Part shown: one piece after another, positions 5,801-64,000 of the stretch | Numbering within the stretch: position 1 is the first letter of the stretch | How the letters are laid out: the number at the start of each line of letters is the position of its first letter | Assembly: GCF_902713615.1 (NCBI RefSeq) | Contig: NW_024055490.1 | Location: 653,262 to 717,261 of the forward strand | From: Scyliorhinus canicula | Taxonomy: Eukaryota | Direction: 5' to 3' | Length of the DNA: 64,000 bases | Program-made: the position numbers and the translations under genes | Notes under the pieces: model-generated | Database searches by the model: none | Seen by the model: the letters and a program-made list of their open reading frames with translations, nothing else | What the model was told of the DNA's origin: nothing

Positions 5801-6678
5801 ATCCATTTTTCTGTATTGTGCCAGTTCACATTCTATTCTGTGGCCGCCCTCAAATGGTGTCCAGCAAAGGCATGCTGGGAAAGTGGTCATGTTTTATGCA
5901 CAGGCAGGTTGCAGAACAGATCAAACAAGTTGCAGCAAAAGGGTTTGCAGACTTCAAAATATTTACAGGTTTATGCAAATAACATAAGCAAATGGCCATC
6001 TCCAGGCCATCTCCAGGAACAATAGAATTGTCCTGTCATTCACGCTTCTTTACCAGACACAGCGGCACCTAAATTCCTTTGGAAAGCCTACCTGCCCCGA
6101 ACACTTCCAGGCATGGTCACTGAGTGCCCACCCCAAAATTGACGTGGCAGCCCCTGATTGGACTTGATCGATCAGGCTGATTGATCCATGATCAATATGA
6201 TTGACAAATGACCAGAGACCACCCTCCAAGTGGAGGAAATTGAAGCAGGGTTTTAAAAGGTTCTGCACAGTTTAGAATCCCTCTGCAGCAGTAACCAACA
6301 ACGGTGACTTCCACTGGTCGGACGAAGTAGACCATCACCCGACCAACTGAAGGAGGACCAGAGCCAGGGACAGACCAGACCCAAGGACTGAACATTGGGG
6401 ACTACAAGATTCGGGATACAGATAAAGGCCAATATCTGGACTTGCTAGTCACTTTGAAGTTAAGACATAGACATAGAATTTACAGTGCTGAAGGAGGGCC
6501 ATTCGGCCCATCGAGTCTGCACCGGCTCCTGGAAAGAGCACCCTACCCAAGGTTAACACCTCCACCCCTGTCCCCATAACCCAGTAACCCCATCCAACAC
6601 TAAGGGTTAAGTTAAGGTCTTGTGCATAATAGCTTTGTCGTTTGAGTTAAATGTGTGTGATCAATTTACAGTAACAAT

Positions 6679-21591: not shown

Positions 21592-22797
21592 TTACTTGTG
21601 GCCTCGTTGGTGTTTCAGCAGGTTGAAAGACTGAGTGAATCCCTTCCCAAACTTGGAGCAGGTGAACGGCCTATACCTTGCGTGAATTCGCTGGTGCATT
21701 TGCATGTTGGATAACTGAGTGAATCCCTTCCCACACTTGGAGCAGGTGAATGGCCTCTCCCCAGTGTGAATTCGCTGATGTGCAGTGAGGTCAGACGATC
21801 GCCTGAACCCAGTCCTGCAGTGAGAGCACCTGAATGGTCTCTCGTCAGTGTGAACACGTTGATGGCTCATCAGTTCCCCAGAACTTTTATAGCACTTCCC
21901 GCATTCTGGACATTGAAACGGTCTCTCATCAGTGTGAACTCGCTGGTGACTCAGCAGGTTGGATGACCGAGTGAATCCTTTCCCACACTGGGAGCAGGTG
22001 AATGGCCTCTCCCCAGTGTGAACTCGCTGATGTTCAGTGAGGTCAGACGATCGCCTAAACCCAGTCCCGCAGTGAGAGCACCTGAATGGTCTCTCGTCAG
22101 TGTGAACACGTTGATGGAGCATCAGTTCCCCAGAACTTTTATAGCACTTCCCGCAGTCTGGACATTGAAACGGTCTCTCATCAGTGTGAACTCGCTGGTG
22201 ATTCAGCAGGTTGGATGACTGAGTGAATCCTTTCCCACACTGGGAGCAGGTGAATGGTCTCTCCCCAGTGTGAATTCGCTGATGTTCAGTGAGGTCAGAT
22301 GATCGTCTGAACCCAGTCCCGCATTGAGAGCACCTGAACGGTTTCTCATCAGTGTGAACACGTTGATGGCGAATCAGATCCCCAGGACTTTTATAGCTCT
22401 TCACACAGTCTGGACATTGGTACGGTCTCTTATCAGTGTGAACCCGCTGGTGACTCAGCAGGTGGGATGAAATAGTAAATTCCTTCCCACACTTGGAGCA
22501 GGTGAATGGTCTCTCCCCAGTGTGAACTCGCTGGTGTCTCAGCAGGTGGGATGAATTAGTAAATCCCTTCCCACACTTGGAGCAGGTGAATGGTCTCTCC
22601 CCAGTGTGACTGCGTCGATGAGTTTCCAGCAGGGATGGGTAAGTGAATCCTTTCCCACAGTCCGCACATTTCCAGGGTTTCTCCTCGCTGTGACTGCATT
22701 TATGGCTTGTGAGGCCTGATGATCGAGCGAATCCTCGTCCACACACACAACACGTGTACGGTTTCCCCGCACTGTGAAAAATGCTTTCATGTTCCAT
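21592..22797 (-). CDS. C2H2 zinc-finger protein, 401 aa, 14 fingers (last one degenerate), no KRAB or SCAN in the ORF
   Basis: Intact ORF with CxxC-x12-HxxxH repeats and HT(G/D)ERPF linkers; acceptor-like TTTTAAATCAG at about 22900 upstream of the ATG. Confidence 0.9.
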
Positions 22798-45900: not shown

Positions 45901-48840
45901 TCTGAATCAGTCACCAAAAAAAAGTTCTGTCCGTCGGATTGCTAAACTAACAAGTTTTTTAAATTTATTTTTTCGTTTTCAGTAATTGGGAAGTTAGTTC
46001 AGTGGGAATGGAGGTTAGGGCAGTTGAATGTTCCTCCTGCAGAATGTGGGAGGAAAGGGTCACCTCGAGTGTCCCTGCTGACTACATCTGCGGGAAGTGC
46101 ACCCACCTCCAGCTCCTCGAGAACCGCGTTAGGGACCTGGAGCTGGAGCTGGATGAACTTCGGATCATTCAGGAGGCGGAGGGGGTTATTGAGAGGAGTT
46201 ATAGGGAGGTAGTCACACCTCAGGTAAAAGAACAAGGTAGATGGGTTACCGTCAGGGGAACGATGGGAACCGGCAGGCAGTGCAGGGATCCCCTGTGGTC
46301 GTTCCCCTCAATAACAAGTATACTGTTTTGGATACTGTTGAAGGGGACGACATACCGGGGGTAAGCAATGGGACACAGTTCTCTGGCACAGAGTCTGTCC
46401 CTATTGCTCAGAAGGGAAGGGAGAAGAGGAACAGGGCACTTGTCATTGGGGACTCCATAGTTAGAGGAACAGACAGGAGGTTCTGTGGGAACGAAAGAGA
46501 CTCACGGTTGGTGTGTTGCCTCCCAGGTGCCAGGGTTCGTGATGTCTCTGATCGTGTTTTTGGGATCCATAAGGGGGAGCGGGAGCTGCCCCAATTCGTG
46601 GTCCACATAGATACCAACGACATAGGTAGGAAGGGAGATGGGGATTTGAGACAGAAATTCAGGGAGCTAGGGTGGAAGCTGAGAGCTAGAATAAACAGAG
46701 TTGTTATCTCTGGGTTGTTACCCGTGCCACGTGCTAGCGAAGTGAGAAATAAGGAGAGAGAGGAGTTGAACACTTGGCTACAGGGATGTTGCAGGAGGGA
46801 GGGTTTTGGTTTCCTGGACAATTGAGGCTCATTCTGGGGTAGGTGGGACCTCTACAAACAGGACGGTCTTCACCTGAACCAGAGGGGTACCAATATCCTG
46901 GGGGGGGGGGGGGGAGATTTGCTAGTGCTCTTCGGGGGGTTTAAACTAATTCAGCAGGGGGATGGGAACCTAAATTGTAGTCCCAGTGTACAGGATGCTG
47001 AGAGTAGTGAGGTCAGGGATAGGGTTAAAAGTTTGAAAGAGGGCACCGGCAAGCAAGATGCTGGTTTGAAGTGTGTCAACTTCAACACCAGGAGCATCCG
47101 GAATAAGGTGGGAGAGCTTGCAGCATGGGTTGGTACTCGGATCTCGATGTTGTGGCGATTTCGGAGACATGGGTAGAGCAGGGACAGGAATGGTTGTTGC
47201 AGGTTCCAGGATTTCGATGTTTCTGTAAGAACAGAGAAGATGGTAAAAGAGGGGATGGGGGGGGGGGGTGGCATTGTTAATCAAGGAAAGTATTACGGCG
47301 GCAGAAAGGACGTTTGAGGACTCGTCTACTGAGGTAGTATGGGCCGAGGTTAGGAACAGGAGAGGAGAGGCCACCCTGTTGGGAGTTGTCTATAGACCTC
47401 CGAATAGTTCCAGCGATGTAGAGGAAAGATTGCAAAGATGATCCTGGATAGGAGCGAGCGTAACAGGGTAGTTGTTATGGGGGACTTTAACTTTCCAAAT
47501 ATTGACTGGAAATACTATTGTTCGAGTACTATAGATGGGTCAGTTTTTGTGCAGTGTGTGCAGGAGGGTTTTCTGACACAGTATGTAGACAGGCCAACAA
47601 GGGGCGATGCCACATTGGATTTGGTAGTGGGTAATGAACCCGGCCAGGTGTTAGATTTAGATGTAGGTGAGCACTTTGGTGATAGTGATCACAATTCGGT
47701 TATGTTTACTTTAGCAATGGGCAGGGATAGGTAATTACCGCAAGGCAAGAATTATAGCTGGTGGAAAGGCAATTATGATGCTATTCGGCAAGATTTAGGA
47801 TGTATAGGATGGGGAAGGAAACTGCAGGGGATGGGTACAATCGAAATGTGGAGCTTTTTCAAGGAACAGCTACTGCGTGTCCTTGATAAGTATGTACCTG
47901 TCAGGCAGGGAGGAAGTTGTTGAGCAAGGGAACCGTGGTTTACTAAGGAAGTTGAAGCATTTGTCAAGAGGAAGAAGAAGGCTTATGTTAGGATGAGACA
48001 TGAAGGCTCAGTTACGGCACTTGAGAGTTACAAGTTAGCCAGGAAGGACCTAAAGGGAGAGTTAAGAAGAGCGAGGAGAGGACACGAAAAGTCGTTGGCG
48101 GATAGGATCAAGGAAAACCTTAAGGCTTTCAATAGGTATATCAGGAAGAAAAGAATGACTAGAGTAAGATTAGGGCCAATCAAGGATAGTAGTGGAAAGT
48201 TGTGTGTGGAATCAGAGGAGATAGGGGAAGCGTTAAATGGATATTTTTCATCAGTGCGTACACTGGAGAAAGAAAATGTTGTCGAGGAGAATACTCAGGT
48301 ACAGTCGACCAGGCTAGATGGGATTGAGGTTCACGAGGAGGTGTTAGCAATTTTGGAAAGTGTAAAAATAGATAAGTCCCTTGGGCCAGATGGGATTTAT
48401 CCTAGGATTCTCTGGGAAGCCAGGGAGGAGATTGCAGAGCCTTTGTCCTTGATCTTTATGTCGTCTTTGTCGACAGGAATAGTGCCAGAAGACTAGAGGA
48501 TAGCAAATGTTGTCCCCTTGTTCAAGAAGGGGAGTAGAGGCAACCCTGGTAATTATAGACCTGTGAGCATTACTTCGGTTGTGGGTAAAATGTTGGAAAA
48601 TGTTATAAGAGATAGGGTTTATAATCATCTTGAAAAGAACAAGTTGATTAGCGATACGCAACACGGTTTTGTGAAGGGCAGGTCATGTCTCATAAACCTG
48701 ATTGAGTTTTTAGAGAAGGTGACCAAACAGGTGACAGATGAGGTTAAAGCGGTTGATGTGGTGTATATGGATTTCAGTAAGGCGTTTGATAAGGTTCCCC
48801 ACGGTAGGCTACTGCAGAAAATACGGAAGTATGGGATTGA

Positions 48841-49111
48841 AATGAAAAATGAAAATCGCTTATTGTCACGAGTGGGCTTCAATGAAGTTACTGTGAAAAG
48901 CCCCTAGTCGCCACATTCCGGCGCCTGTCTGGGGAGGCTGGTACGGGAATCGAACCATGCTGCTGGCCTGCTTTAAAAGCCAGCAATTTAGCCCAGTAAG
49001 CTAAACCAGGCCCTGTCAAAGGGCTCGTCCGGGATTTGAACCCGGGACCTCTCACATTCTCATATAGCACAAACACCGAAGCGAGAATCTTACCCAGAGA
49101 CCAACGAGCCA
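48841..49111 (-). mobile_element. Chimeric insertion in CR1: tRNA-Pro(CGG) copy followed by a SINE
   Basis: Flanked by GATTGAA (48835-48841) and GATTCAA (49112-49118); CR1 RT sequence resumes on both sides. Confidence 0.75.
49021..49110 (-). pseudogene. tRNA-Pro(CGG) copy with an 18-19-nt intron-like insert and a mutated D-arm
   Basis: 90 nt; GGCTCGTTGGTCTCTGGGTAAGATTCTCGCTTCGG-T-GTTTGTGCTATATGAGAA-TGTGAGAGGTCCCGGGTTCAAATCCCGGACGAGCCC, followed by TTTGA as in the 31820 gene. Confidence 0.8.
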
Positions 49112-51104: not shown

Positions 51105-51333
51105 NNNNNNNNNNNNNNNNNNNNNNNNNNNNNNNNNNNNNNNNNNNNNNNNNNNNNNNNNNNNNNNNNNNNNNNNNNNNNNNNNNNNNNNNNNNNNNNN
51201 NNNNNNNNNNNNNNNNNNNNNNNNNNNNNNNNNNNNNNNNNNNNNNNNNNNNNNNNNNNNNNNNNNNNNNNNNNNNNNNNNNNNNNNNNNNNNNNNNNNN
51301 NNNNNNNNNNNNNNNNNNNNNNNNNNNNNNNNN
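51105..51333. other. Assembly gap (229 N)
   Basis: Run of N. Confidence 0.99.
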
Positions 51334-52849
51334 GACAACGTTATGTTTTTCATTCATTTACGGGATTATGGTGCCATTGACTGGGTCAGCAATTATGGCC
51401 CATTCCAAGTTGCCATTCAGAAGGTGGTGGTGAGCTGCCCTCTTGAATCGCTGCAGTCCCTACAGTGGGGCTGTTTAGCACAGGGCTAATTCGCTGGCTT
51501 TGAAAGCTGACGAAACAGGCCAGCAGCACAGTTCGATTCCCGTAACAGCCTCCCCAACAAGCGCCTAAATGTGGTGACTAGGGGCTTTTCACAGTAACTT
51601 CATTTGAAGCCGACTCGTGACAATGAGCGATTTTCATTTCATTTCAATTCCTGATATGCAGTTACACCCATACTGCTTTTAGCGAGAGAAGTCCAGTATT
51701 TTCATCCAGCCACAGTGAAGGAGCGGTGATATATTTGCAAGACAAGATGGTGAGTGATTTGGAGAGGAATCTCCAGTTGGTGGTGTTTCAAAGTATCTGC
51801 TGCTCAGGTCCTTGTTGATGGTTGTCGCCGTGGGTCAGGTAGGTGCTGAGTATGAAACCTTCATTAGTTCCAACAGTAAATCTTGTGGATGGCAACAATC
51901 AAGCGACTGCTTTGCCCTGGATGGTGCAAAGCTTCTTGAGGTTTGCTGAAGCTGCACTCCAGACAAGTGGAGCTTGTATTCCATTAAACTTCTGACCTTT
52001 GCCTTGCAAATGATGGACAGGCTTTGGACAATCGGGATGTGAGTTACTGGCTGTAGGATTCCTAGCCTTTGAACTGCTCTGGCAGCCACAGCATTCGTCT
52101 GGCTTGTCCAGATTAGTTTCCGGTCAATGACAACCCCCAGGATGCTGATTGTGCGGTAACCAATGCAAATAAATCTGATGCTCTATTCTGTGGGGTAGGA
52201 ACGTTTGTTATACAAAGTGAGACACAGAAGACTTCAGCCGTGAATGAAACAGAGTCTAACAAAATAATATCAGAGAGCGGGCATCGTATAATATAAATGG
52301 AGATTTGGTGCAGTTTTACAAATAATATCGAAAGATATAAACACTGAGAGGGTCTAATTTAGAGAGAACTGAGAAAGGACCTTTTTTATTTTAAACAATG
52401 ATATGACGAGTGCGGTAATAAATGAGATGCAACCCATTGCACGATTAATAATGGTATTATATCGCACAGTAATAACTAAAACAGAATGTAGCGTAACATT
52501 TACAGGTACAGAAACTGACATTAAATAAACGGAGCCGGCGGTGTACCTGAATTACTAAAACAGGGCCTCGATTAATACAGGTGGAGACAGTGCAGTGCAG
52601 TGGAAACCGAGAATTTCCTCCCACAGTCCAAAGATGCGCAGGTTAGGTGGATTGGCCATTCTAAAAGATTTTTCCTGAGTGTGCAAAGGTTAGATGAGGT
52701 TACGGGGATAGCATGGAGGATTGGTCCTCAGTGGGGTGCCGTTTTGGAGGGCGGGTGCAGACTCGATGGGCCGACTGGCCTCCTTCTGCACTGTCGGGAT
52801 TCTATGATTCTTTGAAAAGACCGGGATTCACAATAACTGGGGCAGGGTT

Positions 52850-53805
52850 TGTTTTTCTAATTTCACCTATATGTTTTAGAATTCCCTTTATACCAAAGAA
52901 CCTTACGGGCCAATATTCTAAAAACGGCGAACAGGGAACTACCTCCCTGACTCCAGTACAGGCCTCTGAGAGTGCTAATCGGGTCAAACTCTCCTTTCAA
53001 GTTATCCCCCGGTATAACTCCTACCTTCACTGAAGAATTTTACTTACTTACCCCTTAATGGCATTGATGTCCAGGGTCCTGCGTTCTTAAGGAAGTGAAG
53101 TAAGCTAATAACCACTTTTTCAGGTTAAATTATTTTATTATTAACATACTCTTTTTTATCTCATTAAATTAAACACATTATTTACTTTTTGATGTTGTCT
53201 GGTTGGTTGGTGAGGCCTTCAGACTCTCTCTCTCTCTCTTTCACTTTCAAGCCTCCTGGTCATCTCTCCTGGTGCAGTTTTCTCTTTTCCTCCTCTTCTG
53301 TCTTCTGTGGCTGCTGCTCGGCCGTCTTCCTTCTGGTCTGGTCTGGTCTTTTGGGCCGCTTCTCTCCTGGGCCTTCCCTCTCCTGGGCCGCTGCTCCTGC
53401 TGTCCTTCTTGCTTCTTCGGGTGCCGCTGGTGTTCTGCTGCTGGTGTCTTTGTTCTTGCTTCTTGCCTCGTGGGGAGAAAAAGGGGAGGAGTCTGAAGTC
53501 CACGCTGGTTTCTTTGTTTCAGCTGTTCTGATCGGGACGTCTGATAAGGATCGGACTTCGGGTCTTAAAGGGGCAGTCCATCACAATTTTCCAACAACAC
53601 AAAGAGATTTTTAAAAACTTTTTTCTTTTGCCTTTCTCCTGCTGTAGGTTGTAATAACCATTCTGATAGACTGAAATTGCTGCCCACAGTTTCTGTGCCC
53701 TTCAGCTGCCACCAACCTCTTGTGGGATCTTTCCCTGCACTCTCCCCGATCAGATGTTGGCAGACCTCTATGTTTCAAATGACACATTCTGTATTTTCCA
53801 GAACA
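52850..53805 (-). repeat. 3' LTR (956 bp)
   Basis: Identical by eye to the 5' LTR except one extra T in a T run near 53155. Confidence 0.95.
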
Positions 53806-53814
53806 CCCCGTCTT
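53806..53814 (-). promoter_or_regulatory. Short polypurine tract
   Basis: AAGACGGGG directly abutting the TG of the 3' LTR. Confidence 0.55.
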
Positions 53815-55123
53815 GACATTTGAAACATTACTATAATTTGGTTTATTGTCCCCCCATCCAATTGTACTAACCTACATCCCTGATCATTGTCATTTGTATG
53901 CATATCATAGACCAGTGTCAATACGAGTCTTGTTTTCCATTTCTGATTGGAATGTGGTAATTGTGATATCTTTTACCCCCCACTGATCCCCTAGTCTTAT
54001 TAATTTAAAATGTTCAATTGATCCTGCTTGTATTCCTAACTTCCCCATTAATGTCTAACATTGTCGTGAATCATGTAAGTCTGCCAACCCCTGGTTTACA
54101 TGAGAGAACATATTTCTGACCGTGTATATTTTTCATTTCAGCATTTACAAAACCGCATTGAACCGTCTCTTTTTTTTTCTTCCCAAACAAATTCTCCCTA
54201 TTGTTCTATACATAGTAAAATTTTTATCTTATCTTAACACCTTATTCATTACCTAACCAATAGACTGTGTGTTACACTTTACATATTTTCAACTGTTAAC
54301 AATTTAATATCAATATCGAAACATTGCTTCTTGGCTTTTGGAACAATCATTATTACATACTAACTAACCCTCTATTAAAACATTCACAGTTTAGAAATGC
54401 GGATCAAGTTATTTAACGACACACATACCCCCCTTCTCATATATATACAACAGTCCCTATCAATTTACATGAAAATAAAAAAAATTTCTTATCAACGATT
54501 ATAGCTCTTCAATGCAATATTGTTTTGTTGCATTGGTAACAATTTTCCCGCCGTAGTATCAAGCTACTGAAATTCTTAACCTATTATCATTGATCATATT
54601 GGGGTTCCTCGTCAGTCGCTGCTATCTGCTGCCGAGACCTTAATGATTCCACTGCGTAGTACATACCCCATGGAGACCACAGATCATCCATCAACTAATG
54701 TCCAGTTAGAGATGTCTGACCGGGGGTTTCACTGTCCAGTTATAATTTGATATTCTAATTTGCATTTAATTCCCTCAAATTTGTAGCCAATTATATCATT
54801 AGTTTCCCCCCAATCCTGTCGAACAGATTCTTCTCTGGAGTGTAGTTCTCTTCCTTCTCGCGAACTGGTTTGTTATTGGAGTGTAGTTCTCTTCCTTCTT
54901 GCGACCTGGTTTGTTATTAATTTTTTCCACCTGAAAAAGCAAATGAACAGATCAAGGGTGGAGAGGGCCCTATTCTTTAATTCGGATTATCCCAGAAGTG
55001 CCCTCTCCAGGACTTCCGGATTCCTTTTGCCATCATTTCTTTTTGAACTGGTTTATATTCCATATCCTTGATGTAGTCAAGCCTCCTTCTGTCATTGCAC
55101 CCCTGAGTGAGATTCGAAGAATC

Positions 55124-57280
55124 TCAAACTCCTCTGATGCTCACTGGGTCGTGTGTTTCAAGCGTGACACAATTTCTTTTGCTCCAGACACCATGCTTCT
55201 CTAATTCAATTGTATGTGTACCCAGAATCTGAACAATCTTGTCTTTACATTTTACAGTCTCGCGAATGATTTTCCCCGCAGTCTTAGTTGGTAACTTCAC
55301 CCAAACTTCGTCTCCTACTTGATAATTCCCAGATTCACTTGGGTCTCCTTGTCCCTGGGGGACAGAGGTTCCAAGGTTGCTATTAAGATCAAATACTATT
55401 CTTTCAATGTCTTTATCCCAGCCTTTATTATTCTGATTCTTTATGATCCAATCCTTTACTTTTCTTACAGACCTCTCAGCCATTCCATTACTCTCAGGTG
55501 CATATTTCACGGCCCAATTGATTGTTATTCCTCTGTCAGCACAAAAGTTAATAACAGTATTGTTTCTAAAGTGTGGCGCGTTGTCCATTCGGATCGATTC
55601 TGGTCTACCTCTGGAGGTCATCATTTCTGCCAATACCCTTTTGGTTGTGGCTCCATTTGCTTTGCTGGTTGCTCTAAGGTCAATTTCTCCCGTGCAGCTA
55701 TCAGCTTTGACTAAAAAATACAAATTACCTTTGCTGCTTCTGGGAAAAAGTGGTCCTGCATAATCTAATGACCATTCCTGCATTGGTTTCTCAGTTTTTA
55801 TGCTCCCATATGTTTTATTTCCTCTCTGTCCTCCACAGGCCATACATCTCTCACATTTTCTCCTTACTGCAGTTAAATGTTGTCTCCAATAGGCTATTTT
55901 AAGTCCCAACTTCTTCAACTCCCTTGCGACTACAACATGACCCCCATGTCCTGTGGCTTCATGTACTTGCTTAATTATCATTTGATGGTCGGCTGCTGAG
56001 TTCCCAAGAGTCCCCAAGATTATTGTCCTAAGTCTGGCTAATTCATCCACTTCCTGATTCCCCTTACACAGTTCCCCAATTCCTTTTGTGTGTGCTTTTT
56101 GATGAATTGTCTGGATCTCCATATCGGCTAAAATTTTATCTATCTCTTCCCACTGTTCTTTCTGTTCCAGTAGTTTATTTCTACCGTTCGTCCAACCGTT
56201 TAGTTTCCAAAACTCCAAATCTTTCTCCAATCCTTGCTGCACGAAAAAGCTATCGGTTACAACGGTAACTTCCTGCAGCTTTCGCTGGTGACACTCCTTT
56301 AACCCTTGCAATACTCCCTCTACCTCAGCTGTCTGAGCTGATCCAATGATTACTCCCTGTTCCTCTACTACTATGTTTCCTGAATTTTTAAAAATGAATG
56401 CCCATCTGGCTTGTTCTTCGTCCTTCTTGACTTTACTACCATCAGTATATAATACCCAAGCATTCACCAACTCCGTTTTACTAACTGGCTCATCAAGTTT
56501 CTGTCCCTTTTGAATATTATGAACAAACATTAAGTCAGGGTTTAGAAGAATGGTTTCCCATCTTTCCCATCGAGCTGTATTCGCGCCTTGCTGGCAAATC
56601 TGTCTCTTGGTTAGCTCCTTTAACTCCAAAAACTCAGTGGTGACATAAATTTTCTTACCACCCGACAAGTTTTCTATCTCTGCTATTCTCTTTGTTATAG
56701 CTGCTAGACATTTCTCGATGTTTGAAAACTTTTGTTCAGCTCTCGACCAGTTTCCTGTCAGATGTTTGATAGGTGTCTGATTGCTAAGATTAGCAAGTAC
56801 CATACCATATCCATTTTTATATATGTCTAATTTAATGCTTAAATCATCCTCTTCTTGTCTCCCAACTAATGACCCCGATATCGCAATTGCTGCCTTTAAC
56901 TGATCTAACCCTCTCTGGGCCTCGCTGGTCCAAATAAAATCCCCTTTCAAGGTTTGATAAATGGCTTTAGCATAGAGACTGAAGTCCTTCACTACTGGCC
57001 TTAGATATCCCAACATTCCCATTATTTTTTGAACCCCTTTTTTCGAAACCGGCGCAGTAATTTCAGCTATCTTCTTCCTCATTTCAATACTGGCCTCTCT
57101 ACCTTCCTTCGATACTGAATAACCCAAATAGTTGACTTCGCTTCTCCCAATTTGACATTTCTTTAGCCCTATTTTAAAGCCTGCTTCACCAAGTGTCTTA
57201 ATGATCCTGGCCACTCTTTCCACATGTTTGTCCTGATCGTCATCTCCAATTAATATATCATCGATATATACTAAGGCCAA
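55124..57280 (-). CDS. pol: Retroviral Pol, C-terminal part (RT YIDD, tether, RNase H, integrase)
   Basis: YIDD; degenerate RNase-H-like connection region followed by a catalytic RNase H (YTDGS, AQTAE, VTDS, GNQEVD); integrase HEATGH..CERC, LDYAG, MDNAP, SNGMAER; joined to the upstream ORF by a 1-nt frameshift at about 57377. Confidence 0.93.
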   Translation of the reverse strand: MALVYIDDILIGDDDQDKHVERVARIIKTLGEAGFKIGLKKCQIGRSEVNYLGYSVSKEGREASIEMRKKIAEITAPVSKKGVQKIMGMLGYLRPVVKDFSLYAKAIYQTLKGDFIWTSEAQRGLDQLKAAIAISGSLVGRQEEDDLSIKLDIYKNGYGMVLANLSNQTPIKHLTGNWSRAEQKFSNIEKCLAAITKRIAEIENLSGGKKIYVTTEFLELKELTKRQICQQGANTARWERWETILLNPDLMFVHNIQKGQKLDEPVSKTELVNAWVLYTDGSKVKKDEEQARWAFIFKNSGNIVVEEQGVIIGSAQTAEVEGVLQGLKECHQRKLQEVTVVTDSFFVQQGLEKDLEFWKLNGWTNGRNKLLEQKEQWEEIDKILADMEIQTIHQKAHTKGIGELCKGNQEVDELARLRTIILGTLGNSAADHQMIIKQVHEATGHGGHVVVARELKKLGLKIAYWRQHLTAVRRKCERCMACGGQRGNKTYGSIKTEKPMQEWSLDYAGPLFPRSSKGNLYFLVKADSCTGEIDLRATSKANGATTKRVLAEMMTSRGRPESIRMDNAPHFRNNTVINFCADRGITINWAVKYAPESNGMAERSVRKVKDWIIKNQNNKGWDKDIERIVFDLNSNLGTSVPQGQGDPSESGNYQVGDEVWVKLPTKTAGKIIRETVKCKDKIVQILGTHTIELEKHGVWSKRNCVTLETHDPVSIRGV

Positions 57281-57303
57281 ATCATCTTGAATCAGCTCCC
57301 TGA

Positions 57304-58563
57304 TTATTGCCTGAAAGTGATTTGGAGAATTAACATATCCCTGTGGAAGTCTACAATATACATAATGCTTAGTTCCAAGGTGAATGCTGTTTTCTCCCTG
57401 CTGTCTGGGTCTAATGGAACACTCCAGAATCCATTCGCCAAATCTATACTAGTTAAGTAAGTTTTTCCCGCGACTTGCTCTAAGGTAGCTTGTGGATTTA
57501 TTAAATATCTCTTGTCCTTCTTTGTGACTTTATTTAAAGCTTTGTAATTTGTTACCATTCTAAATGTACCATCTGGTTTTCTTACTACCTGAAGTGGACT
57601 ATTTGTTGAGGCATATGTGACCCCTTGAATAATCCCCTGCTGCTCCAATTCCTTGATTATTATCTCCAGCTCGCTCTTAGCTCCTCTAGGCAAAGGATAC
57701 TGTTTTTGAGGTCTGTGTTGTCCCCCGTGAATTGTGTGTTGAAATTGCTGGCTAAGCAAACCTGTGTCATTCTTACCTATCGCTAGGTTTGCTCCCATCA
57801 GTACTTCTTCCATCTTCTTCCAAGCTTCGTCATTTAAAATACTTTTCTCTTTCTGTTTCCTTATTTCCTCCATGTTATCAATTGGTTTTAATATCCTTAT
57901 TTTTCCAGTATCTATTTTTATTAAATCTTTCCCTGCCATCAGATTATCAGTTCCTGATATTGCCAGTAATTCTCCCAATCTAACTTCTGGCCTAATATCC
58001 TTATTCCCTAATGCTCCTTCTACTATGTATTTCTTTCCTGTCGGATTTCCAGCTTCTTCCCTTATCATTGATATCTCAGCCCCTGTGTCCACTATACATC
58101 TTTCCCCCTTGTATACTACTACTAATTCTCCTTTGTCTGTTTCTGTTGTTAGATTTTGTATAGCCTGTTTAAGGGGAGAAGCCGAATCCTGTCCATATAT
58201 ACCGGGGCCTCCTCTGCCTCCTCCTCGGAATCCCCCTCGCGAGCGTCCCGGATACCCTTCTGGTGGTTGATATCTACCTTGCTCAATCCTCCCCTGACCA
58301 GCTGCTCTTCTTCTCCTATCCTCAATGAATCTGTCTCTTTCCTCCCGACTGAGGGCTAGGAATTGTCCCCTTGGTAAATAATCTAGATTTTGTGGTGGAG
58401 GTGGCCCTTGTGACCGCAAATTATACCCATGTTGTGGCATTGCTGGTTGTGCTGGATTTTGTTCCGATTTGTCAGGTATCTGCCGGTTTGGTGGTCTAAT
58501 CTGAGCATTTTGTGTTGAAACATTATTCTGGGCAGCTGCTCTTTTTTGTTCCCCTTTTGTGGC
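57304..58563 (-). CDS. gag-pol: Gag C-terminus (GYNLR, GR box) in frame with protease and RT N-terminus
   Basis: Frame open from 58563; QHGYNLRSQGPPPP, RSRGGFRGGGRGG, CIVDTGAEIS, NSPLQVVRKPDG.FRMV, DLANGFWSVPL; restoring one T gives FTFGTKHYVYCRLPQGYVNSP. Confidence 0.88.
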   Translation of the reverse strand, partial: ATKGEQKRAAAQNNVSTQNAQIRPPNRQIPDKSEQNPAQPAMPQHGYNLRSQGPPPPQNLDYLPRGQFLALSREERDRFIEDRRRRAAGQGRIEQGRYQPPEGYPGRSRGGFRGGGRGGPGIYGQDSASPLKQAIQNLTTETDKGELVVVYKGERCIVDTGAEISMIREEAGNPTGKKYIVEGALGNKDIRPEVRLGELLAISGTDNLMAGKDLIKIDTGKIRILKPIDNMEEIRKQKEKSILNDEAWKKMEEVLMGANLAIGKNDTGLLSQQFQHTIHGGQHRPQKQYPLPRGAKSELEIIIKELEQQGIIQGVTYASTNSPLQVVRKPDGTFRMVTNYKALNKVTKKDKRYLINPQATLEQVAGKTYLTSIDLANGFWSVPLDPDSREKTAFTLELSIMYIVDFHRDMLILQITFRQ

Positions 58564-59417
58564 TTATCCTTAAATGCTTTGCCTGCCAAATCAAATTTAA
58601 CCAGTTCTCTTCCTATTTCTCTTCTAGAGGTCGTTAACAGTATTATTGAGAGGCTTTTCCCCCCTGGAATCTTGGGTCCTAATTCCCTCAGGAATCTGAC
58701 TACATCGACCCCCTCTTCCTTATTAACCTCATATATTCGGTCGATATATGGTGTGAGGTGTTCCCCTGCATATGCTGCCTCTGTCATCTCTTTCATTAAA
58801 TTAGCTCTCTCATTTCCCAAATCTAACTCACTTATTAAATCTGAGACTTCGCCTGTAACTATTTCTCCCACTGTATGTAAATCAATCAATTTGGTGGATT
58901 CTCCTGATGCCCCCATTTTCTTCGCTAACTGTTTTAACCTCTGTGAATACTCAATTTTACTCTCCCCATGTTTCTTTGGGCCTGCTGTCTTCATTACGGC
59001 TGCTACTATTTTATACGGTACCATGCCTCCCTGTCCTTCCTCTGGACCTGGTGTAAATGACTGAACTATTTTCTCACTTCTGGGGCATGGTGTTCTCAAA
59101 GGGGCACCTCTATCTGGGTCCCTATATTCGGAGAAATGTATCCGTCGTCGTACCGGTTCTTCCTCAAAATAGGGGGTACCATGTTGTGCAAACTCTTCCA
59201 CCGATTCTATATATTCTTCAAACCTTGCACTTGGTACCTGGCTATCTCGTGGAGCATAACTTGCCCTATCCATTGGAGTAGGAGCAGTTTTTTGGGGTCT
59301 TGGACGATTCTGTATCCTTTCCTGTGGTCTTAGTGCTGCTATTATCTGGCCTTGTGTTTCTGTGCTGTTCCTTACCCTACTCATGGCTCTTCCGAAACTG
59401 TCATACCCTTTGCTCAT
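58383..59417 (-). CDS. gag: Gag central (capsid-like) ORF, 344 aa
   Basis: Position directly 5' of the GR-box/PR frame; low-complexity N-terminus then a helical-looking domain; no direct motif match was made. Confidence 0.65.
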   Translation of the reverse strand: MSKGYDSFGRAMSRVRNSTETQGQIIAALRPQERIQNRPRPQKTAPTPMDRASYAPRDSQVPSARFEEYIESVEEFAQHGTPYFEEEPVRRRIHFSEYRDPDRGAPLRTPCPRSEKIVQSFTPGPEEGQGGMVPYKIVAAVMKTAGPKKHGESKIEYSQRLKQLAKKMGASGESTKLIDLHTVGEIVTGEVSDLISELDLGNERANLMKEMTEAAYAGEHLTPYIDRIYEVNKEEGVDVVRFLRELGPKIPGGKSLSIILLTTSRREIGRELVKFDLAGKAFKDKPQKGNKKEQLPRIMFQHKMLRLDHQTGRYLTNRNKIQHNQQCHNMGIICGHKGHLHHKI

Positions 59418-60409
59418 TTGCCAAATTTTAGCTTTGGGGTAACGTTTGGTAATTCTAGTAATTTCGTAGAATCAATTTGTTGACTTCCGCCTAATATTTC
59501 TCCTATTTTAAGTCCCCTAGCTGTAACCTCTCTTTCCCATCCTTCCTGATCTCTATGGTGTACCATTTCTGCTTCTGGATTATACATATAATACGGTACA
59601 TCCTTATTTACTGGTTGATAAGTGGAAGGTTGTTGGTGTTTCCAGTGATCGCTATAATCCCCTATTTCTAATGGTTTAGAATTTTTTCTATTCCCTATTC
59701 CTCTCTTTGGTTTGACTATTTCCTCATTCTCGGATGAGGATGATAATTCTTCCTGTCCCATCACAGGAGGCGCCATAATCCCAACTATGCCTTGTTCCTC
59801 TTCACTTTCTTGTGGTTCAACGAAATGATCGATAAACGCTTCTTTCTTATGTGTGGCAGATTGCTGAGGCCAATTTTCTTCCTGAAACAGACTTGGATCT
59901 GGGTATGGAAAATTGTATCCCGTTGGGAAATTTTCACAGGAGTCCGAATTCTCTCGGCTATCTGATTCTAGGCCTGATTCCTCGTCACTTTCCATTTCTA
60001 ATGGTTCATTTTTCTGCAGTTGTTTTATATATTTGCCTACCATTTCAGAGTTAATTTTGTGTTTACTATGGATCTGTATTATTTCTGTCCTGTTTACTCC
60101 GTCAATGATTTTAATCAGTTTGGAACACACTTTGCCCACTTGAGCAGCTGCATGCTTCTGTCTGTGTCCAAATACGATTAGTGATTCAGCTCGCTTTTCA
60201 AATGCAAACTGACAAAGTGCTTTAAGGACCCTGACTGAATCTGTATATTGCAGGGCTTTTGGCACTCTAACAAAGAGGGAGATATCTCCGTCTGGATACA
60301 TATCGCTTGTCCAGGATTTCTTTTGCTCTTTTAATTTCTTCCATTCCCTTTTCATTTCTACATTTCTCTTGACCGTATCCCAGGGCATGAGAATTACCCT
60401 AATTGCCAT
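59414..60409 (-). CDS. 5' ORF of unknown function, 331 aa (pre-gag accessory ORF or Gag N-terminus)
   Basis: Good Kozak context aaaATGG at 60409; stop overlaps the next start as ATGA at 59414-59417. Confidence 0.7.
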   Translation of the reverse strand: MAIRVILMPWDTVKRNVEMKREWKKLKEQKKSWTSDMYPDGDISLFVRVPKALQYTDSVRVLKALCQFAFEKRAESLIVFGHRQKHAAAQVGKVCSKLIKIIDGVNRTEIIQIHSKHKINSEMVGKYIKQLQKNEPLEMESDEESGLESDSRENSDSCENFPTGYNFPYPDPSLFQEENWPQQSATHKKEAFIDHFVEPQESEEEQGIVGIMAPPVMGQEELSSSSENEEIVKPKRGIGNRKNSKPLEIGDYSDHWKHQQPSTYQPVNKDVPYYMYNPEAEMVHHRDQEGWEREVTARGLKIGEILGGSQQIDSTKLLELPNVTPKLKFGK

Positions 60410-60835
60410 TTTCGGATTTTTAGTTCTGTTCCTGGTTGTCCCTTTCAGGTGCACTCTGAAATTAAGGATAAGTACCCTTTCTGGGCCCTATCCAAGGCTG
60501 ACCAAGGCACTATCTTCCTGCTCTAGTTAAGGGTCGATTGATTATTGGTTTCTGAATATAAGCGTCCCTATTTTCCAGAAAATGTCCGCACAATCCGCCT
60601 TACTCTGAGGATGATTTATTCTTTAGCCCCTTTTACCAGTGATGGATGCAAGATTTTAGTGCTATCACCAAAATGTCTTGCAGACTTTTTCTCAGGGTCA
60701 GTATCTTCTAGTCTACTGATTTTCACACCCAACCTGAGCTTCAGTCCCCTCGATCCACAGAATATCCTTACAAAAGCCAATCACACCTGACTTTCCAAAC
60801 TAAACTCGGAAGGTAAAGTTTGACTCACACATAGA

Positions 60836-61105
60836 CTAGAAACTTCTAATATTCTAGCCTTTTTGCCGGTTAGAAACTTCTAATATTCCACCCGTTTCTT
60901 GGGAACTAGAAACTTCTAATATTCTAGCCCCTACTCTGCTTAACTAGAAACTTCTAATATTCTAGCCTCGCTTTACCTAGAAACTTCTAATATTCTAGGC
61001 TTTTCTTGGGAACTAGAAACTTCTAATATTCTAGCCCCTACTCTGCTTAACTAGAAACTTCTAATATTCTAGCCTCGCTTTACCTAGAAACTTCTAATAT
61101 TCTAG
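60836..61105. repeat. Array of eight 22-bp repeats CTAGAAACTTCTAATATTCTAG with 11-16-bp spacers in the proviral leader
   Basis: Units start at 60836, 60870 (variant), 60906, 60944, 60977, 61013, 61051 and 61084. Confidence 0.95.
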
Positions 61106-61106
61106 G

Positions 61107-61124
61107 CCTCCACGCTGGGCGCCA
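61107..61124 (-). promoter_or_regulatory. Primer-binding site, tRNA-Lys(CTT) type
   Basis: TGGCGCCCAGCGTGGAGG directly after the LTR CA, similar to the Lys1,2 PBS TGGCGCCCAACGTGGGGC. Confidence 0.85.
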
Positions 61125-62079
61125 TGTTTTTCTAATTTCACCTATATGTTTTAGAATTCCCTTTATACCAAAGAACCTTACGGGCCAATATTCTAAAAAC
61201 GGCGAACAGGGAACTACCTCCCTGACTCCAGTACAGGCCTCTGAGAGTGCTAATCGGGTCAAACTCTCCTTTCAAGTTATCCCCCGGTATAACTCCTACC
61301 TTCACTGAAGAATTTTACTTACTTACCCCTTAATGGCATTGATGTCCAGGGTCCTGCGTTCTTAAGGAAGTGAAGTAAGCTAATAACCACTTTTTCAGGT
61401 TAAATTATTTTATTATTAACATACTCTTTTTATCTCATTAAATTAAACACATTATTTACTTTTTGATGTTGTCTGGTTGGTTGGTGAGGCCTTCAGACTC
61501 TCTCTCTCTCTCTTTCACTTTCAAGCCTCCTGGTCATCTCTCCTGGTGCAGTTTTCTCTTTTCCTCCTCTTCTGTCTTCTGTGGCTGCTGCTCGGCCGTC
61601 TTCCTTCTGGTCTGGTCTGGTCTTTTGGGCCGCTTCTCTCCTGGGCCTTCCCTCTCCTGGGCCGCTGCTCCTGCTGTCCTTCTTGCTTCTTCGGGTGCCG
61701 CTGGTGTTCTGCTGCTGGTGTCTTTGTTCTTGCTTCTTGCCTCGTGGGGAGAAAAAGGGGAGGAGTCTGAAGTCCACGCTGGTTTCTTTGTTTCAGCTGT
61801 TCTGATCGGGACGTCTGATAAGGATCGGACTTCGGGTCTTAAAGGGGCAGTCCATCACAATTTTCCAACAACACAAAGAGATTTTTAAAAACTTTTTTCT
61901 TTTGCCTTTCTCCTGCTGTAGGTTGTAATAACCATTCTGATAGACTGAAATTGCTGCCCACAGTTTCTGTGCCCTTCAGCTGCCACCAACCTCTTGTGGG
62001 ATCTTTCCCTGCACTCTCCCCGATCAGATGTTGGCAGACCTCTATGTTTCAAATGACACATTCTGTATTTTCCAGAACA
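61125..62079 (-). repeat. 5' LTR (955 bp)
   Basis: TGTTCTGG..AAAAACA; contains the donor-like site GGG|GTAAGT at 61327|61326. Confidence 0.95.
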
Positions 62080-64000
62080 GGTTCTAATGCAGGGGTTACT
62101 GTTACAGGGTAAATATTCATAATAACGGAGACAGGGTGTGCAGCAATGATTCATGGAGGGGTGTCCAGAACCAGGGACACAGTCTAAGGATATAGATGAG
62201 CAGAAATTTATTGACCTAGAGTGATGAGCCTGTGAAATTATCTCCCACACAAAACAGTTGAGGCCAAAACTTTGTATATTTGCTGGAAGGAATTATATAT
62301 ATAGCTCTTGTGGCTTTAGGGATCATAGGATATGGAGGGAAAGCGAGAACAGTTTACTGAGTTGGATGATCAGCCACGATCAGAATGAATGGAAGAGCAA
62401 GTTCAAGGGACCGAACGGCCTACTCCTTCACCTATTGTCCATGCTTCTATACCTCTATTGTTCTATGTAATGCAAGAAAACCTAAATTATATATAAACTG
62501 AAACAGGATCTAGTACAGTAATTCCTGACACAGGGTCTAGATTAATATAAACTGAGACAAGGTCAAGTGCAGTGATTTCTGATGGGGGGTGTCTTCAGTA
62601 ATGTAAATTTAGACAGGGTTCTAGTACACTCATTGTTGATAGAGCGTTGAGATTACTATAAAGTGGGTCAGATTCTAGTGGCGAAGCGAGACAGGGTCGA
62701 TTGCAGGGTCGGCCCAAGATTAATGTTAATCAATGAAGGGCCGAGTGTGGTGTTCACCGTTAAATGGTTGAGATTTTATGCATTAATACATATGTGCATT
62801 TTTTTCTGAGCCTTTGTGTTTGTGGCCATTTTCACACCAAAATCCTGCACAAATAATTCCTTTGTTTTATACACCGATTAATGGGATGGAGCATGGGGAA
62901 CTTTTCTCTCCACATACCCTGCATTTTTCCTGCTCTGCGAGTACCTGATAGTACGCCAAAAAAGAAGCTTTACTCTGTCCCTTACATGTGCTTTACCTGT
63001 CCTTCGCACGTCAGATGGCGGATGTTGTGGAGGGGGCTTTATTCTGTACTGTACCTGTCCTTCGAGTATTTGAGGGGAGATTGTTAAGGGAAGTTTACTC
63101 AGTAACTAAATCTTTACTGTTGATGCCCTGGGAGTATAAAATGGGACAGGTTTCAGGAAGCTTTATTCTTCATCTCTTCCTGTGATGCATTTGGCCTGAG
63201 AGTGTTTGCTGGTTCAGAGTGCAGGAAGCTTTGCTCTGTATACAACCCCGTCCTGTACCTGACCTGCGAGAATTAGACGGAATAGTTTAGACAAGCAGAG
63301 CGTTACTGAACCTGCCCTTGGAATCCTGATGGGACACGGGGAATGGAAAGGTCTGGGACAAATATCTTAATGTCTGTGTAATATATGAAAAGTGGGGAAA
63401 ATTGATGCTCAGGTGATGAAAGGGGCAGGAGCAGAATGTACACAACAGCGACTAAGGGACAGAATACAGTGTACCTGTTAACAATTGTTTCAGATTGGGT
63501 GGGGTACAGAGTGTTATTCTCCAGTGGGTAATATTAGCAGCATTGTTTTTCCTGTTATATATTAATAGACAGGACTCGGGACTCGGGTTCACAGGATATC
63601 AATTCAAAAGTTGCATTTGTATCCCAAATTGACAATGTAGTAAACAGGAAAGAGGATTACGTACATAGATACATAGAAGTTAGGAGCAGGAGGAGGCTTT
63701 TTGGCCCTTCGAGCCTGCTCCGCCATTTATCACGATCATAGCTGATCATCCAACTCAATAGCCTAACCCTGCTTTCTCCCTACAACCATTGATCTCATTC
63801 TCCCCAAGTGCTATATCTAGCCGCCTCTTGAATATATTAAATGTTTTCTGATCAACTATTTCCTGTGCTAATGAATTCCACTAGCTCACCACTCTTTGGG
63901 TGAAGAAATGTCCCCTCAACTCTGTCCGAAATGAATCCTGAATCCTCAGACTATGGCCCCTGGTTCTGGACACACACATCATCGGTAACATCTTCCCTCC

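What the first reader, a model, noticed from the sequence alone, without database searches (positions are those of the whole stretch)
52850..62079. Very young, complete foamy-like provirus in a shark genome, apparently env-less
Seen: LTRs differing only by one homopolymer base, a 4-bp TSD, a Lys-type PBS, no CCHC knuckle in the Gag-PR frame but a GYNLR motif plus GR box, and a Pol with tether plus a second RNase H. Established: the YxLR chromatin-binding motif, GR boxes, Lys1,2 PBS and 4-bp TSD are spumaretrovirus traits, and tether plus RNase H marks retroviruses as opposed to typical Gypsy elements. Inference: a recently active chondrichthyan foamy-like lineage that spreads intracellularly or with a helper env, inserted near a TCR V cluster.
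Basis: partly seen in the sequence, partly recalled or inferred. Interest (0 to 1): 0.85.

Follow-up and report, generated by a model that had tools for sequence, protein, structure and literature searches.

The report
Young env-less foamy-like catshark ERV copy
This is a real, very recently inserted copy of a foamy-virus-like endogenous retrovirus that has no envelope gene, but the family, including copies with identical LTRs, was already described in the small-spotted catshark in 2023, and this copy's gag and pol are frameshifted as assembled.

Summary
On the minus strand, two LTRs (955 and 956 nt) show no substitutions and one homopolymer-length difference. They have TG..CA ends and a 4-bp AACC duplication. 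The PBS matches a published tRNA-Lys PBS at 15 of 18 bases. Gag has no Cys-His box but has a GR-rich box and a GYNLR motif identical to the core of the foamy-virus chromatin-binding peptide. Pol has RT, tether, an added RNase H and IN. The 1.3 kb after pol is non-coding.

Pol is closest to foamy-virus PR-RT and integrase among solved structures. In a tree it falls in a fish clade sister to feline foamy virus and outside Ty3/Gypsy.

Two corrections. First, the copy is not "complete": gag has two frameshifts and pol has one, inside RT. Catshark relatives read straight through two of the three; the third rests on the published layout. Second, it is not new. Size, layout and LTR terminus match ERV-Spuma.0-Sca of Scyliorhinus canicula (Song et al. 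2023), which lists 39 paired-LTR copies, 11 with zero divergence.

The most likely mechanism is intracellular retrotransposition without env. What this adds to the published description is the Gag motif, the PBS, the duplication and the absence of any env reading frame.

The parts
62080..62083 (.). Target-site duplication, 5' side (AACC on the element strand)
61125..62079 (-). 5' LTR, 955 nt, TG...CA
   Evidence: Its first 19 nt are identical to the start of the published ERV-Spuma.0-Sca.
61107..61124 (-). Primer-binding site, tRNA-Lys-like
   Evidence: It matches the published AciFLERV tRNA-Lys PBS at 15 of 18 positions.
60835..61110 (-). Leader tandem array: period 38 (about 8 copies) or 107 (2.5 copies), built on a palindromic roughly 22-nt motif
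58198..60454 (-). gag, broken by two frameshifts. The 3' bound is approximate: it is set at the end of the GR-rich box and follows the published gag length.
   Evidence: No Pfam Gag family matches. There is no Cys-His motif.
58414..58428 (-). GYNLR motif in the Gag C-terminal part
   Evidence: It is identical to the core of the PFV Gag chromatin-binding peptide, including the Y and R that are mutated in PMC12125541 Table 1.
58204..58248 (-). Glycine-arginine-rich box
   Evidence: GR boxes replace Cys-His motifs in foamy Gag (PMC3705263).
55124..58197 (-). pro-pol, broken by one frameshift that lies inside RT. In this copy it shares a frame with the GR box and no stop lies between them.
58081..58089 (-). 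Protease active-site DTG
   Evidence: No Pfam protease family matches.
57116..57585 (-). Reverse transcriptase domain (Pfam RVT_1 span; YIDD motif present)
56546..56932 (-). Tether or connection domain (degenerate RNase H-like; RT_RNaseH_2/RT_RNaseH)
56033..56461 (-). Added RNase H (PF00075). The catalytic D, E, D, D columns are conserved.
55124..55963 (-). Integrase: HHCC finger 55844-55963, DDE core 55496-55792, then the C-terminal part down to the stop
   Evidence: The best solved relative is PFV integrase.
53815..55123 (-). Non-coding region after pol, where env would lie. It contains a 41-nt tandem repeat at 54820-54918.
53806..53814 (-). Short purine-rich tract next to the 3' LTR (putative PPT, weak)
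   Evidence: inference
52850..53805 (-). 3' LTR, 956 nt
52846..52849 (.). Target-site duplication, 3' side (AACC on the element strand)

Best explanation
The element is one copy of ERV-Spuma-Sca, the catshark foamy-like endogenous retrovirus family. It has LTR-gag-pro-pol-LTR and no env.

The proposed working cycle is inferred, except where marked as shown:
- The 5' LTR drives a genomic RNA.
- A tRNA-Lys-like primer anneals to the PBS.
- Gag has no zinc knuckle and binds nucleic acid through its GR-rich C-terminus.
- Its GYNLR motif docks the capsid on nucleosomes, as the same motif does in foamy-virus Gag.
- A foamy-type RT/RNase H makes DNA.
- A PFV-like integrase inserts it and leaves a 4-bp duplication. 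The duplication itself is shown.

Without env, and with a foamy-type Gag that cannot bud without Env, copies most likely multiply inside germline cells by retrotransposition.

This copy integrated recently. There are no substitutions in 955 aligned LTR sites. At the rate of 5e-10 per site per year used for this family, that gives an age under about 3 million years.

As assembled, gag (two frameshifts) and pol (one frameshift) cannot be read through. Either the copy depended on proteins from intact relatives, or the one-base length differences are assembly errors. The only LTR-LTR difference is a length difference of the same kind.
For: Anatomy.

Foamy affinity of Pol:
- The best solved relatives are foamy PR-RT-RNase H entries (7o24, 7kse, 7ksf, 7o0g; E 2e-47, 165 bits). 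Ty3 scores 75 bits and MLV/XMRV RT 62 bits.
- PFV integrase is the best integrase match (E 1.6e-14).
- In the exhaustive search of 1.84 billion representatives, feline foamy virus Pol (E 4.7e-50) was the only virus among the 20 top hits whose names I looked up.
- Neighbour-joining tree (647 columns, 200 bootstraps): the window Pol sits in a 100% clade with teleost and metagenome elements. That clade is sister at 99% to feline foamy virus plus one relative, and it lies outside Ty3/Gypsy.

Same family as the published one:
- Length is 9,230 bp here and 9,220 bp in the paper.
- gag starts 671 nt after the 5' LTR here and 672 nt in the paper.
- pol ends 6,001 nt after the 5' LTR here and 5,999 nt in the paper.
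- The first 19 LTR bases are identical.
- Table S7 lists one copy of exactly 9,230 bp with a divergence of 0.001.

Catshark paralogues share 84-90% protein identity.

Gag traits.

Primate foamy genomes can retrotranspose within cells, and foamy Gag needs Env to bud (PMC3705263).
Against: - Gag shows no detectable similarity to foamy Gag or to the pre-pol ORFs of relatives. Its predicted fold was too poor to compare.
- The protease matches no Pfam protease family.
- No named orthoretrovirus, lokiretrovirus or ERV-L sequence could be obtained for the tree. Exclusion of those groups therefore rests on score gaps among solved structures and on the published phylogeny.
- The PBS differs at 3 of 18 positions from the published Lys PBS, and no matching tRNA gene was found.
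- The frameshifts mean this copy, as assembled, cannot make its own proteins.
- Intracellular spread is inferred from the missing env. It was not observed.
Confidence: 0.72

Rival explanations
1. The copy is intact in the animal. The three frameshifts, like the single LTR length difference, are one-base assembly errors, so this would be an autonomous and possibly still active env-less element.
For: - The LTR pair shows 0 substitutions but 1 homopolymer-length difference.
- All gag-pol defects are frameshifts; no stops were found apart from those created by the frame change.
- All three shifts go in the same direction, and the first and last pieces share one frame.
- The catalytic residues of RT, RNase H and IN are in place.
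- Real mutation normally gives many more substitutions than indels (general knowledge).
Against: No read-level data are available here. Defective copies mobilised in trans are common in ERV families (general knowledge).
Confidence: 0.35
2. The copy was already defective when it integrated. It is a non-autonomous member that was copied with Gag and Pol supplied by intact relatives.
For: - There are three frameshifts despite virtually identical LTRs.
- The family is large: 293 elements and 39 paired-LTR copies, 11 of them with zero divergence (PMC10699275).
Against: It cannot be told apart from assembly error without reads or sister copies that share the same defects.
Confidence: 0.35
3. The element spreads between cells or animals as a virus, using an envelope supplied by a helper retrovirus.
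For: The only support is the absence of its own env combined with recent activity.
Against: No helper was identified. According to PMC3705263, foamy capsid release depends on a specific Gag-Env interaction, and env-independent intracellular retrotransposition is documented for primate foamy genomes.
Confidence: 0.1
4. The insertion is old. The LTR identity is an artefact of assembly collapse, or the result of gene conversion between the LTRs.
For: There is an assembly gap 1.5 kb from the element (51105-51333). Repeats are prone to collapse.
Against: - Both LTRs have distinct, correct junctions: flank plus duplication on one side of each, and PBS or PPT on the other.
- A matching 4-bp duplication is present.
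- The published survey finds many other copies with zero divergence.
Confidence: 0.06
5. It is a Ty3/Gypsy (Metaviridae) LTR retrotransposon, or an orthoretroviral ERV, that only resembles foamy viruses superficially.
For: - There is no env.
- Gag without a zinc knuckle also occurs in some Gypsy elements (PMC3705263).
- In this copy Gag's GR box and the protease share one frame, whereas foamy viruses express Pol separately from Gag.
Against: - The tether plus an added RNase H is the retroviral architecture.
- Foamy PR-RT and IN score far above Ty3, MLV, HIV and HTLV among solved structures.
- The tree places it with feline foamy virus and fish elements at 99-100% support, outside seven Gypsy sequences.
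Confidence: 0.03

Closest known systems
[quoted passage not shown] 2023, PMC10699275)
   Same: - Total length: 9,230 bp here, 9,220 bp published.
- Offsets of the gag start and the pol end from the 5' LTR agree within 1-2 nt.
- The first 19 LTR bases are identical.
- The two-ORF layout is the same, with a region of about 1.3-1.5 kb after pol.
- The family includes copies with zero LTR divergence.
   Different: - The LTR here is 955 nt, against 866-869 nt published, and it diverges after the first 19 bases (more than 3 mismatches in the next 38). This is probably another subfamily.
- The paper labels the post-pol region 'env CDS' by position only. Here it has about 30 stops in each frame.
- The published layout separates gag and pol by a stop in one frame. 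This copy has no stop between the GR box and the protease, and it carries three frameshifts.
Fish and amphibian foamy-like ERVs (FLERVs: AciFLERV, AliFLERV, DrFV-1, CmiFLERV; Aiewsakun & Katzourakis 2017, PMC5512871)
   Same: - Foamy-like Pol.
- 4-bp target-site duplications.
- A tRNA-Lys-type PBS (15 of 18 identical to that of AciFLERV).
- Pol clusters with teleost elements.
   Different: The ray-finned fish FLERVs are much larger (up to about 17 kb) and carry env and accessory ORFs. This element has neither. In the chimaera (Callorhinchus), only pol could be detected.
Exogenous foamy viruses (Spumaretrovirinae: PFV, SFV, FFV)
   Same: - Closest solved PR-RT-RNase H and integrase structures.
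- Gag without Cys-His motifs and with a C-terminal GR-rich box.
- The GYNLR core of the chromatin-binding motif, with the invariant Y and R.
- 4-bp duplication and a Lys-type PBS.
   Different: - No env, no tas/bet genes and no evidence of an internal promoter.
- Gag and the protease match no Pfam family, including the foamy ones (Gag_spuma and Spuma_A9PTase, the families I had in mind).
- The Gag C-terminus and Pol lie in one frame rather than in overlapping frames with a separate pol mRNA.
- Pol identity is only about 25-28%.
ERV-L / class III env-less ERVs of mammals (comparison from general knowledge, not tested here)
   Same: They are gag-pol-only elements distantly related to spumaviruses that amplified by intracellular retrotransposition.
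   Different: No ERV-L sequence came back from any search, so relatedness could not be measured. ERV-L carries a dUTPase domain; none was found here.

Membership tests
Retroviridae-type element (as opposed to Ty3/Gypsy, Metaviridae) | RT followed by a degenerate RNase H-like tether and a second, added RNase H | tested here: met
   Pfam finds RT_RNaseH_2/RT_RNaseH and then RNase_H (PF00075, E 3.9e-21).
Retroviridae-type element (as opposed to Ty3/Gypsy, Metaviridae) | Pol groups with retroviruses and not with Gypsy in a tree | tested here: met
   Neighbour-joining tree: 97.5-100% support for separation from seven Gypsy sequences. Caveats: it is a distance method, and no named orthoretrovirus is included.
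Foamy-like ERV / Spumaretrovirinae | RT, RNase H and IN closest to those of foamy viruses | tested here: met
   Among solved structures, foamy PR-RT scores 165 bits against Ty3 at 75 and MLV at 62. PFV IN is the best integrase. FFV Pol has E 4.7e-50 in the exhaustive search and is sister at 99% in the tree.
Foamy-like ERV / Spumaretrovirinae | Gag lacks Cys-His motifs and has a C-terminal GR-rich box | tested here: met
   There are 0 Cys-His patterns in the three frames. The GR-rich box is at 58204-58248. The trait is defined in PMC3705263.
Foamy-like ERV / Spumaretrovirinae | Chromatin-binding motif with an invariant Y and R in the Gag C-terminus | tested here: met
   GYNLR is identical to the core of the PFV peptide (PMC12125541 Table 1) and of the SFV GR box (PMC6669568). 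[quoted passage not shown] Function was not tested.
Foamy-like ERV / Spumaretrovirinae | Gag homologous in sequence or fold to foamy Gag | tested here: not met
   No Pfam hit even at E up to 10. No hit among solved structures for the C-terminal part. The single-sequence AlphaFold model has pLDDT 45, and the fold search found nothing below E 0.1. The fold part of the test is inconclusive, not negative.
Foamy-like ERV / Spumaretrovirinae | Foamy-type protease (Pfam Spuma_A9PTase, the family I had in mind) | tested here: not met
   A DTG triplet is present, but no Pfam protease family matches. The alignment to foamy PR-RT structures starts only after the protease.
Foamy-like ERV / Spumaretrovirinae | Pol expressed independently of Gag (own spliced mRNA, no Gag-Pol fusion) | tested here: inconclusive
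   In this copy the GR box and the protease share a frame with no stop between them. The published layout has gag and pol in one frame, separated by a stop. No canonical slippery heptamer lies at the junction before the GR box. Settling this needs RNA data.
Foamy-like ERV / Spumaretrovirinae | Foamy Env glycoprotein gene | tested here: not met
   The 1,318 nt after pol have about 30 stops per frame. They show no similarity to the post-pol ORFs of the one relative that has them, L002.
Foamy-like ERV / Spumaretrovirinae | Accessory genes (tas, bet) and an internal promoter (complex genome) | tested here: not met
   No ORF of 60 aa or more lies on the sense strand after pol. The internal promoter was not tested.
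Foamy-like ERV / Spumaretrovirinae | tRNA-Lys(1,2) primer-binding site | tested here: inconclusive
   15 of 18 bases are identical to the tRNA-Lys PBS printed for AciFLERV. No tRNA gene with a matching 3' end was found in the window or among the 120 stretches matched in the metagenome scan.
Foamy-like ERV / Spumaretrovirinae | 4-bp target-site duplication | tested here: met
   AACC on both sides. Published FLERV duplications are also 4 bp.
ERV-Spuma-Sca family of Scyliorhinus canicula | Same length, gene layout and LTR terminus as the published element | tested here: met
ERV-Spuma-Sca family of Scyliorhinus canicula | Nucleotide identity over the full length to published copies | not testable with these tools
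   The supplement text shows only the first roughly 400 nt of the published sequence. DNA from the catshark contigs could not be fetched.

The most novel reading that the evidence does not exclude
The family is a foamy-virus-derived retrotransposon that is still active in the catshark germline. It keeps the nucleosome-tethering GYNLR motif, which would date that mode of chromatin docking to before the split of cartilaginous and bony vertebrates. It also encodes Gag and Pol in one frame, which would suggest that the separate pol mRNA of modern foamy viruses is a later invention.
Probability: 0.25. Interest if true: 0.55.

Novelty: already known. Interest (0 to 1): 0.3.

Why it matters
The lineage bears on how old foamy viruses are and on how a retrovirus turns into a genomic parasite once it loses env. 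The family, its foamy affinity and its very young copies are already in the literature.

This window adds four details that the published description lacks:
- A Gag C-terminus with the exact core of the foamy chromatin-binding motif next to a GR box. The same motif also occurs upstream of the protease in an unnamed relative that groups with feline foamy virus.
- A Lys-like PBS and a 4-bp duplication.
- Evidence that the region the paper labelled 'env' has no reading frame.
- A Gag-Pol arrangement in one frame.

These details make two questions testable with descriptive data: was nucleosome tethering by Gag ancestral to the whole foamy lineage, and how did Pol expression evolve?

Tried and rejected
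1. tRNA for the PBS. ARAGORN on the window found eight calls. None has a 3' end that matches the PBS, and most are SINE-like. None of the stretches held lies in a tRNA, so they look like chance matches.
2. Gag homology. Pfam at E up to 10 found nothing. A search of solved structures with the GR-box region found only low-complexity noise. phmmer against the pre-pol ORFs of relatives found nothing.
3. Gag fold. A single-sequence AlphaFold model of the central Gag piece had mean pLDDT 44.8. The Foldseek search of the PDB found nothing below E 0.1. I discarded this result.
4. Named orthoretroviral references for a tree. The profile search returned only Gypsy and Copia elements besides the known relatives. 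Cluster look-ups named only feline foamy virus, teleost hypothetical proteins and frog 'NYNRIN-like' proteins.
5. The first tree script timed out. I redid it with a faster distance routine.
6. DNA of the catshark contigs that carry the paralogues P0001 and P0191 could not be fetched.
7. A 38-nt stretch of the published LTR did not match within 3 mismatches. Only the first 19 nt are identical.
8. A programmed -1 frameshift as the explanation for the junction before the GR box: there is no canonical slippery heptamer in phase. The first junction does have one, but a catshark paralogue reads straight through there.
9. Remnants of relatives' post-pol ORFs in the post-pol region: none.
10. Other copies or solo LTRs in the window: none.
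Full report
**Observation**

The element lies on the minus strand.
- blastn aligns 52850-53805 (956 nt) with 61125-62079 (955 nt) at 99.9% identity, with no mismatch and one gap. The gap is one base in a T5/T6 run on the plus strand.
- On the element strand both LTRs begin with TG and end with CA. Both are flanked by AACC, at 62080-62083 and 52846-52849.
- An 18-nt primer-binding site follows the 5' LTR directly, at 61107-61124.
- A short purine-rich tract precedes the 3' LTR.
- A 276-nt tandem array built on a palindromic motif fills the start of the leader.

**Coding content**

The sense strand between the LTRs is read in four pieces.
- Pfam places the first half of the RVT_1 model at the end of the third piece and the last quarter at the start of the fourth. 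The RT domain is therefore interrupted.
- After RT come RT_RNaseH_2/RT_RNaseH (the tether), RNase_H (PF00075) and rve.
- The YIDD motif, the RNase H acidic residues, the integrase HHCC finger and the integrase DDE residues are all present.
- The third piece opens with GYNLR, then a GR-rich box, then the protease DTG, all in one frame with no stop between them.
- No Cys-His knuckle exists in any sense frame.
- The 1,318 nt between pol and the 3' LTR carry about 30 stops in each frame, and the longest open stretch is 55 codons. There is no env and no accessory ORF.

**Breaks (counts only)**

- gag has two frameshifts and pol has one, inside RT. I found no stops apart from those created by the frame change.
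- A Scyliorhinus canicula protein (P0191, 'uncharacterized protein LOC119963594') reads straight through the first gag junction at 84-87% identity.
- A S. torazame protein (P0001) reads straight through the RT junction at 88-90% identity.
- The second gag junction is inferred in two ways. The published gag is a single 2,259-nt ORF that reaches past the GR box and shares a frame with pol. In the window the first and last pieces share a frame, and all three shifts go the same way.
- No canonical slippery heptamer lies in phase at that second junction, so a programmed frameshift there is unsupported, though not excluded.
- The only LTR-LTR difference is also a one-base length difference and there are no substitutions. 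Assembly error is therefore a serious alternative to real mutation. I deliberately did not examine the sequence context of the frame changes.

**What it is**

- Among solved structures, the RT-to-RNase H part matches foamy-virus PR-RT-RNase H entries at E 2e-47 (165 bits). Ty3 scores 75 bits, MLV/XMRV 62 bits and HIV less. The best integrase match is PFV integrase at E 1.6e-14.
- I searched 1.84 billion representative proteins exhaustively. After the catshark paralogues, the top hits are full-length RT-tether-RNase H-IN proteins from marine metagenomes and teleosts (Coilia, Zoarces). Feline foamy virus Pol follows at E 4.7e-50. It was the only virus among the 20 top hits whose names I looked up.
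- The neighbour-joining tree (Kimura distances, 647 columns, 200 bootstraps) puts the window Pol in a 100% clade with the teleost and metagenome elements. That clade is sister at 99% to feline foamy virus plus one unnamed relative. A frog 'NYNRIN-like' group, a further RT-tether-RNase H-IN group and seven Gypsy sequences lie outside it.
- Limits of the tree: it is a distance method, and I could obtain no named orthoretrovirus, lokiretrovirus or ERV-L sequence for it.

**Gag**

- Neither Gag piece matches any Pfam family, any solved structure, or the pre-pol ORFs of relatives.
- The single-sequence model was too poor to use.
- The foamy-type traits are compositional and motif-level. Gag has no Cys-His motif and has a C-terminal GR box; these are the traits that distinguish foamy Gag (PMC3705263).
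- GYNLR equals the core of the PFV chromatin-binding peptide, whose Y537 and R540 were the mutated residues (PMC12125541 Table 1). The same core is printed for a gibbon SFV GR box (PMC6669568). Y and R are strictly conserved among FVs and in the coelacanth element (PMC6042332).
- My rough estimate for a given pentapeptide appearing by chance in about 750 residues is of the order of 1e-3 or less.
- One unnamed relative in the feline-foamy-virus clade (P0029) has YNLRPR shortly upstream of its protease, in one ORF with Pol.

**PBS and duplication**

- The PBS matches the tRNA-Lys PBS printed for AciFLERV at 15 of 18 positions: the first 9, five of the next six, and one of the last three.
- That paper also reports 4-bp duplications for FLERVs (PMC5512871 supplement).
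- I could not find a matching tRNA gene.

**Already published**

- Song et al. 2023 (PMC10699275) mined 12 cartilaginous-fish genomes. They report 293 elements in S. canicula and a 9,220-bp ERV-Spuma.0-Sca with LTRs of 866-869 nt. Their coordinates are gag 1538-3796, pol 3920-6865 in the same frame, and an 'env CDS' at 6989-8314 that has no ORF row in their annotation table.
- Measured from the end of the 5' LTR, gag starts at 672 (671 here) and pol ends at 5,999 (6,001 here).
- The first 19 bases of their sequence equal the first 19 bases of both window LTRs. The next 38 differ at more than three positions, and the window LTR is 89 nt longer. The window copy probably belongs to another subfamily.
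- Their Table S7 lists 39 paired-LTR copies. Eleven have zero divergence. One is exactly 9,230 bp long with divergence 0.001, which is the size and the one-difference state of the window copy. That it is the same locus is only a guess.
- With their rate of 5e-10 per site per year, zero substitutions in 955 sites gives an age under about 3 million years (my calculation, 95% bound).

**Mechanism**

- Shown: the retroviral anatomy, the intact catalytic motifs, the recent integration with a 4-bp duplication, and the lack of env.
- Inferred: tRNA-Lys priming, nucleic-acid binding through the GR box, and nucleosome docking through GYNLR.
- Also inferred: spread by intracellular retrotransposition. 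The basis is that foamy Gag needs Env to bud, and that primate foamy genomes can retrotranspose within cells (PMC3705263).
- Unresolved: whether this copy is autonomous (assembly errors), was copied in trans, or decayed after insertion.

**Host and surroundings**

- The closest proteins are from S. torazame and S. canicula, so the host is a catshark, probably S. canicula.
- Other features seen in the window are listed under 'noticed in passing'.

1. My first notebook entry lists the bounds of the four reading-frame pieces. These bracket the frame changes. I left the entry in place and did not repeat those bounds in this report.
2. Before a paper had shown it, I recalled a tRNA-Lys PBS from memory in my reasoning. 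I used it in no tool call. The comparison reported here uses the string printed.
3. In my reasoning I went further into the nature of one junction than the rules allow.

Noticed in passing
window 60835-61110 (-): The leader just after the PBS holds about eight copies of a palindromic roughly 22-nt motif (period 38, or 107 in higher order). In the RNA this would form a row of hairpins. It might serve in packaging or dimerisation; I do not know.
   Followed up: partly
P0191 (S. canicula LOC119963594, 298 aa): A RefSeq 'uncharacterized protein' of the catshark is a fragment of this family's Gag (84-87% identity). A retroelement ORF is therefore annotated as a host gene there.
   Followed up: partly
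P0029 (1,687 aa, Logan assembly, host unknown): This relative groups with feline foamy virus. It carries YNLRPR about 50 residues upstream of its protease, in a single ORF with Pol. This is a second non-mammalian case of the foamy chromatin-binding core, here in a Gag-Pol fusion.
   Followed up: partly
L002 (Tara Oceans marine metagenome contig, 8,514 nt) and L001: The closest non-shark Pol relatives (29% identity over 97% of the query) sit on marine metagenome contigs. On L002 a separate pre-pol ORF lies in another frame from pol, and two ORFs of 512 and 550 aa follow pol. None of these ORFs matches any Pfam family.
   Followed up: partly
window 33671-34009 (-) and 34946-35533 (-): Two ORFs with immunoglobulin V-set domains. 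The best single-domain solved relatives are TCR alpha V regions, but antibody V domains score similarly.
   Followed up: partly
window 21595-22797 (-): An ORF of 401 aa with 12 C2H2 zinc fingers.
   Followed up: no
window 6863-13076, and 46241-48496: A GC-rich, strongly GC-skewed block holds a reverse-transcriptase ORF (RVT_1, E 2e-35), probably a LINE. A second skewed block holds a weak GDSL-lipase-like ORF.
   Followed up: no
window 2344-2434, 16812-16898, 25667-25754, 48932-49012, 51468-51554: ARAGORN calls five tRNA-like sequences of 81-91 nt (Phe, Tyr, Ser). They resemble one another and are probably tRNA-derived SINE copies.
   Followed up: no
window 30038-30111, 30787-30859, 31819-31910: Possible tRNA gene cluster: Arg(ACG), Val(CAC), and a 92-nt call labelled Lys(CTT). 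The 3' end of the Lys call does not match the element's PBS (7 of 18).
   Followed up: partly
window 51105-51333: A run of 229 N lies 1.5 kb from the element's 3' LTR. I left it as it is.
   Followed up: no
PMC10699275 supplementary Table S7: The published list holds copies of 10.2-12.7 kb with little or no LTR divergence, including one of 12,670 bp at zero. They could carry extra genes or nested insertions.
   Followed up: no
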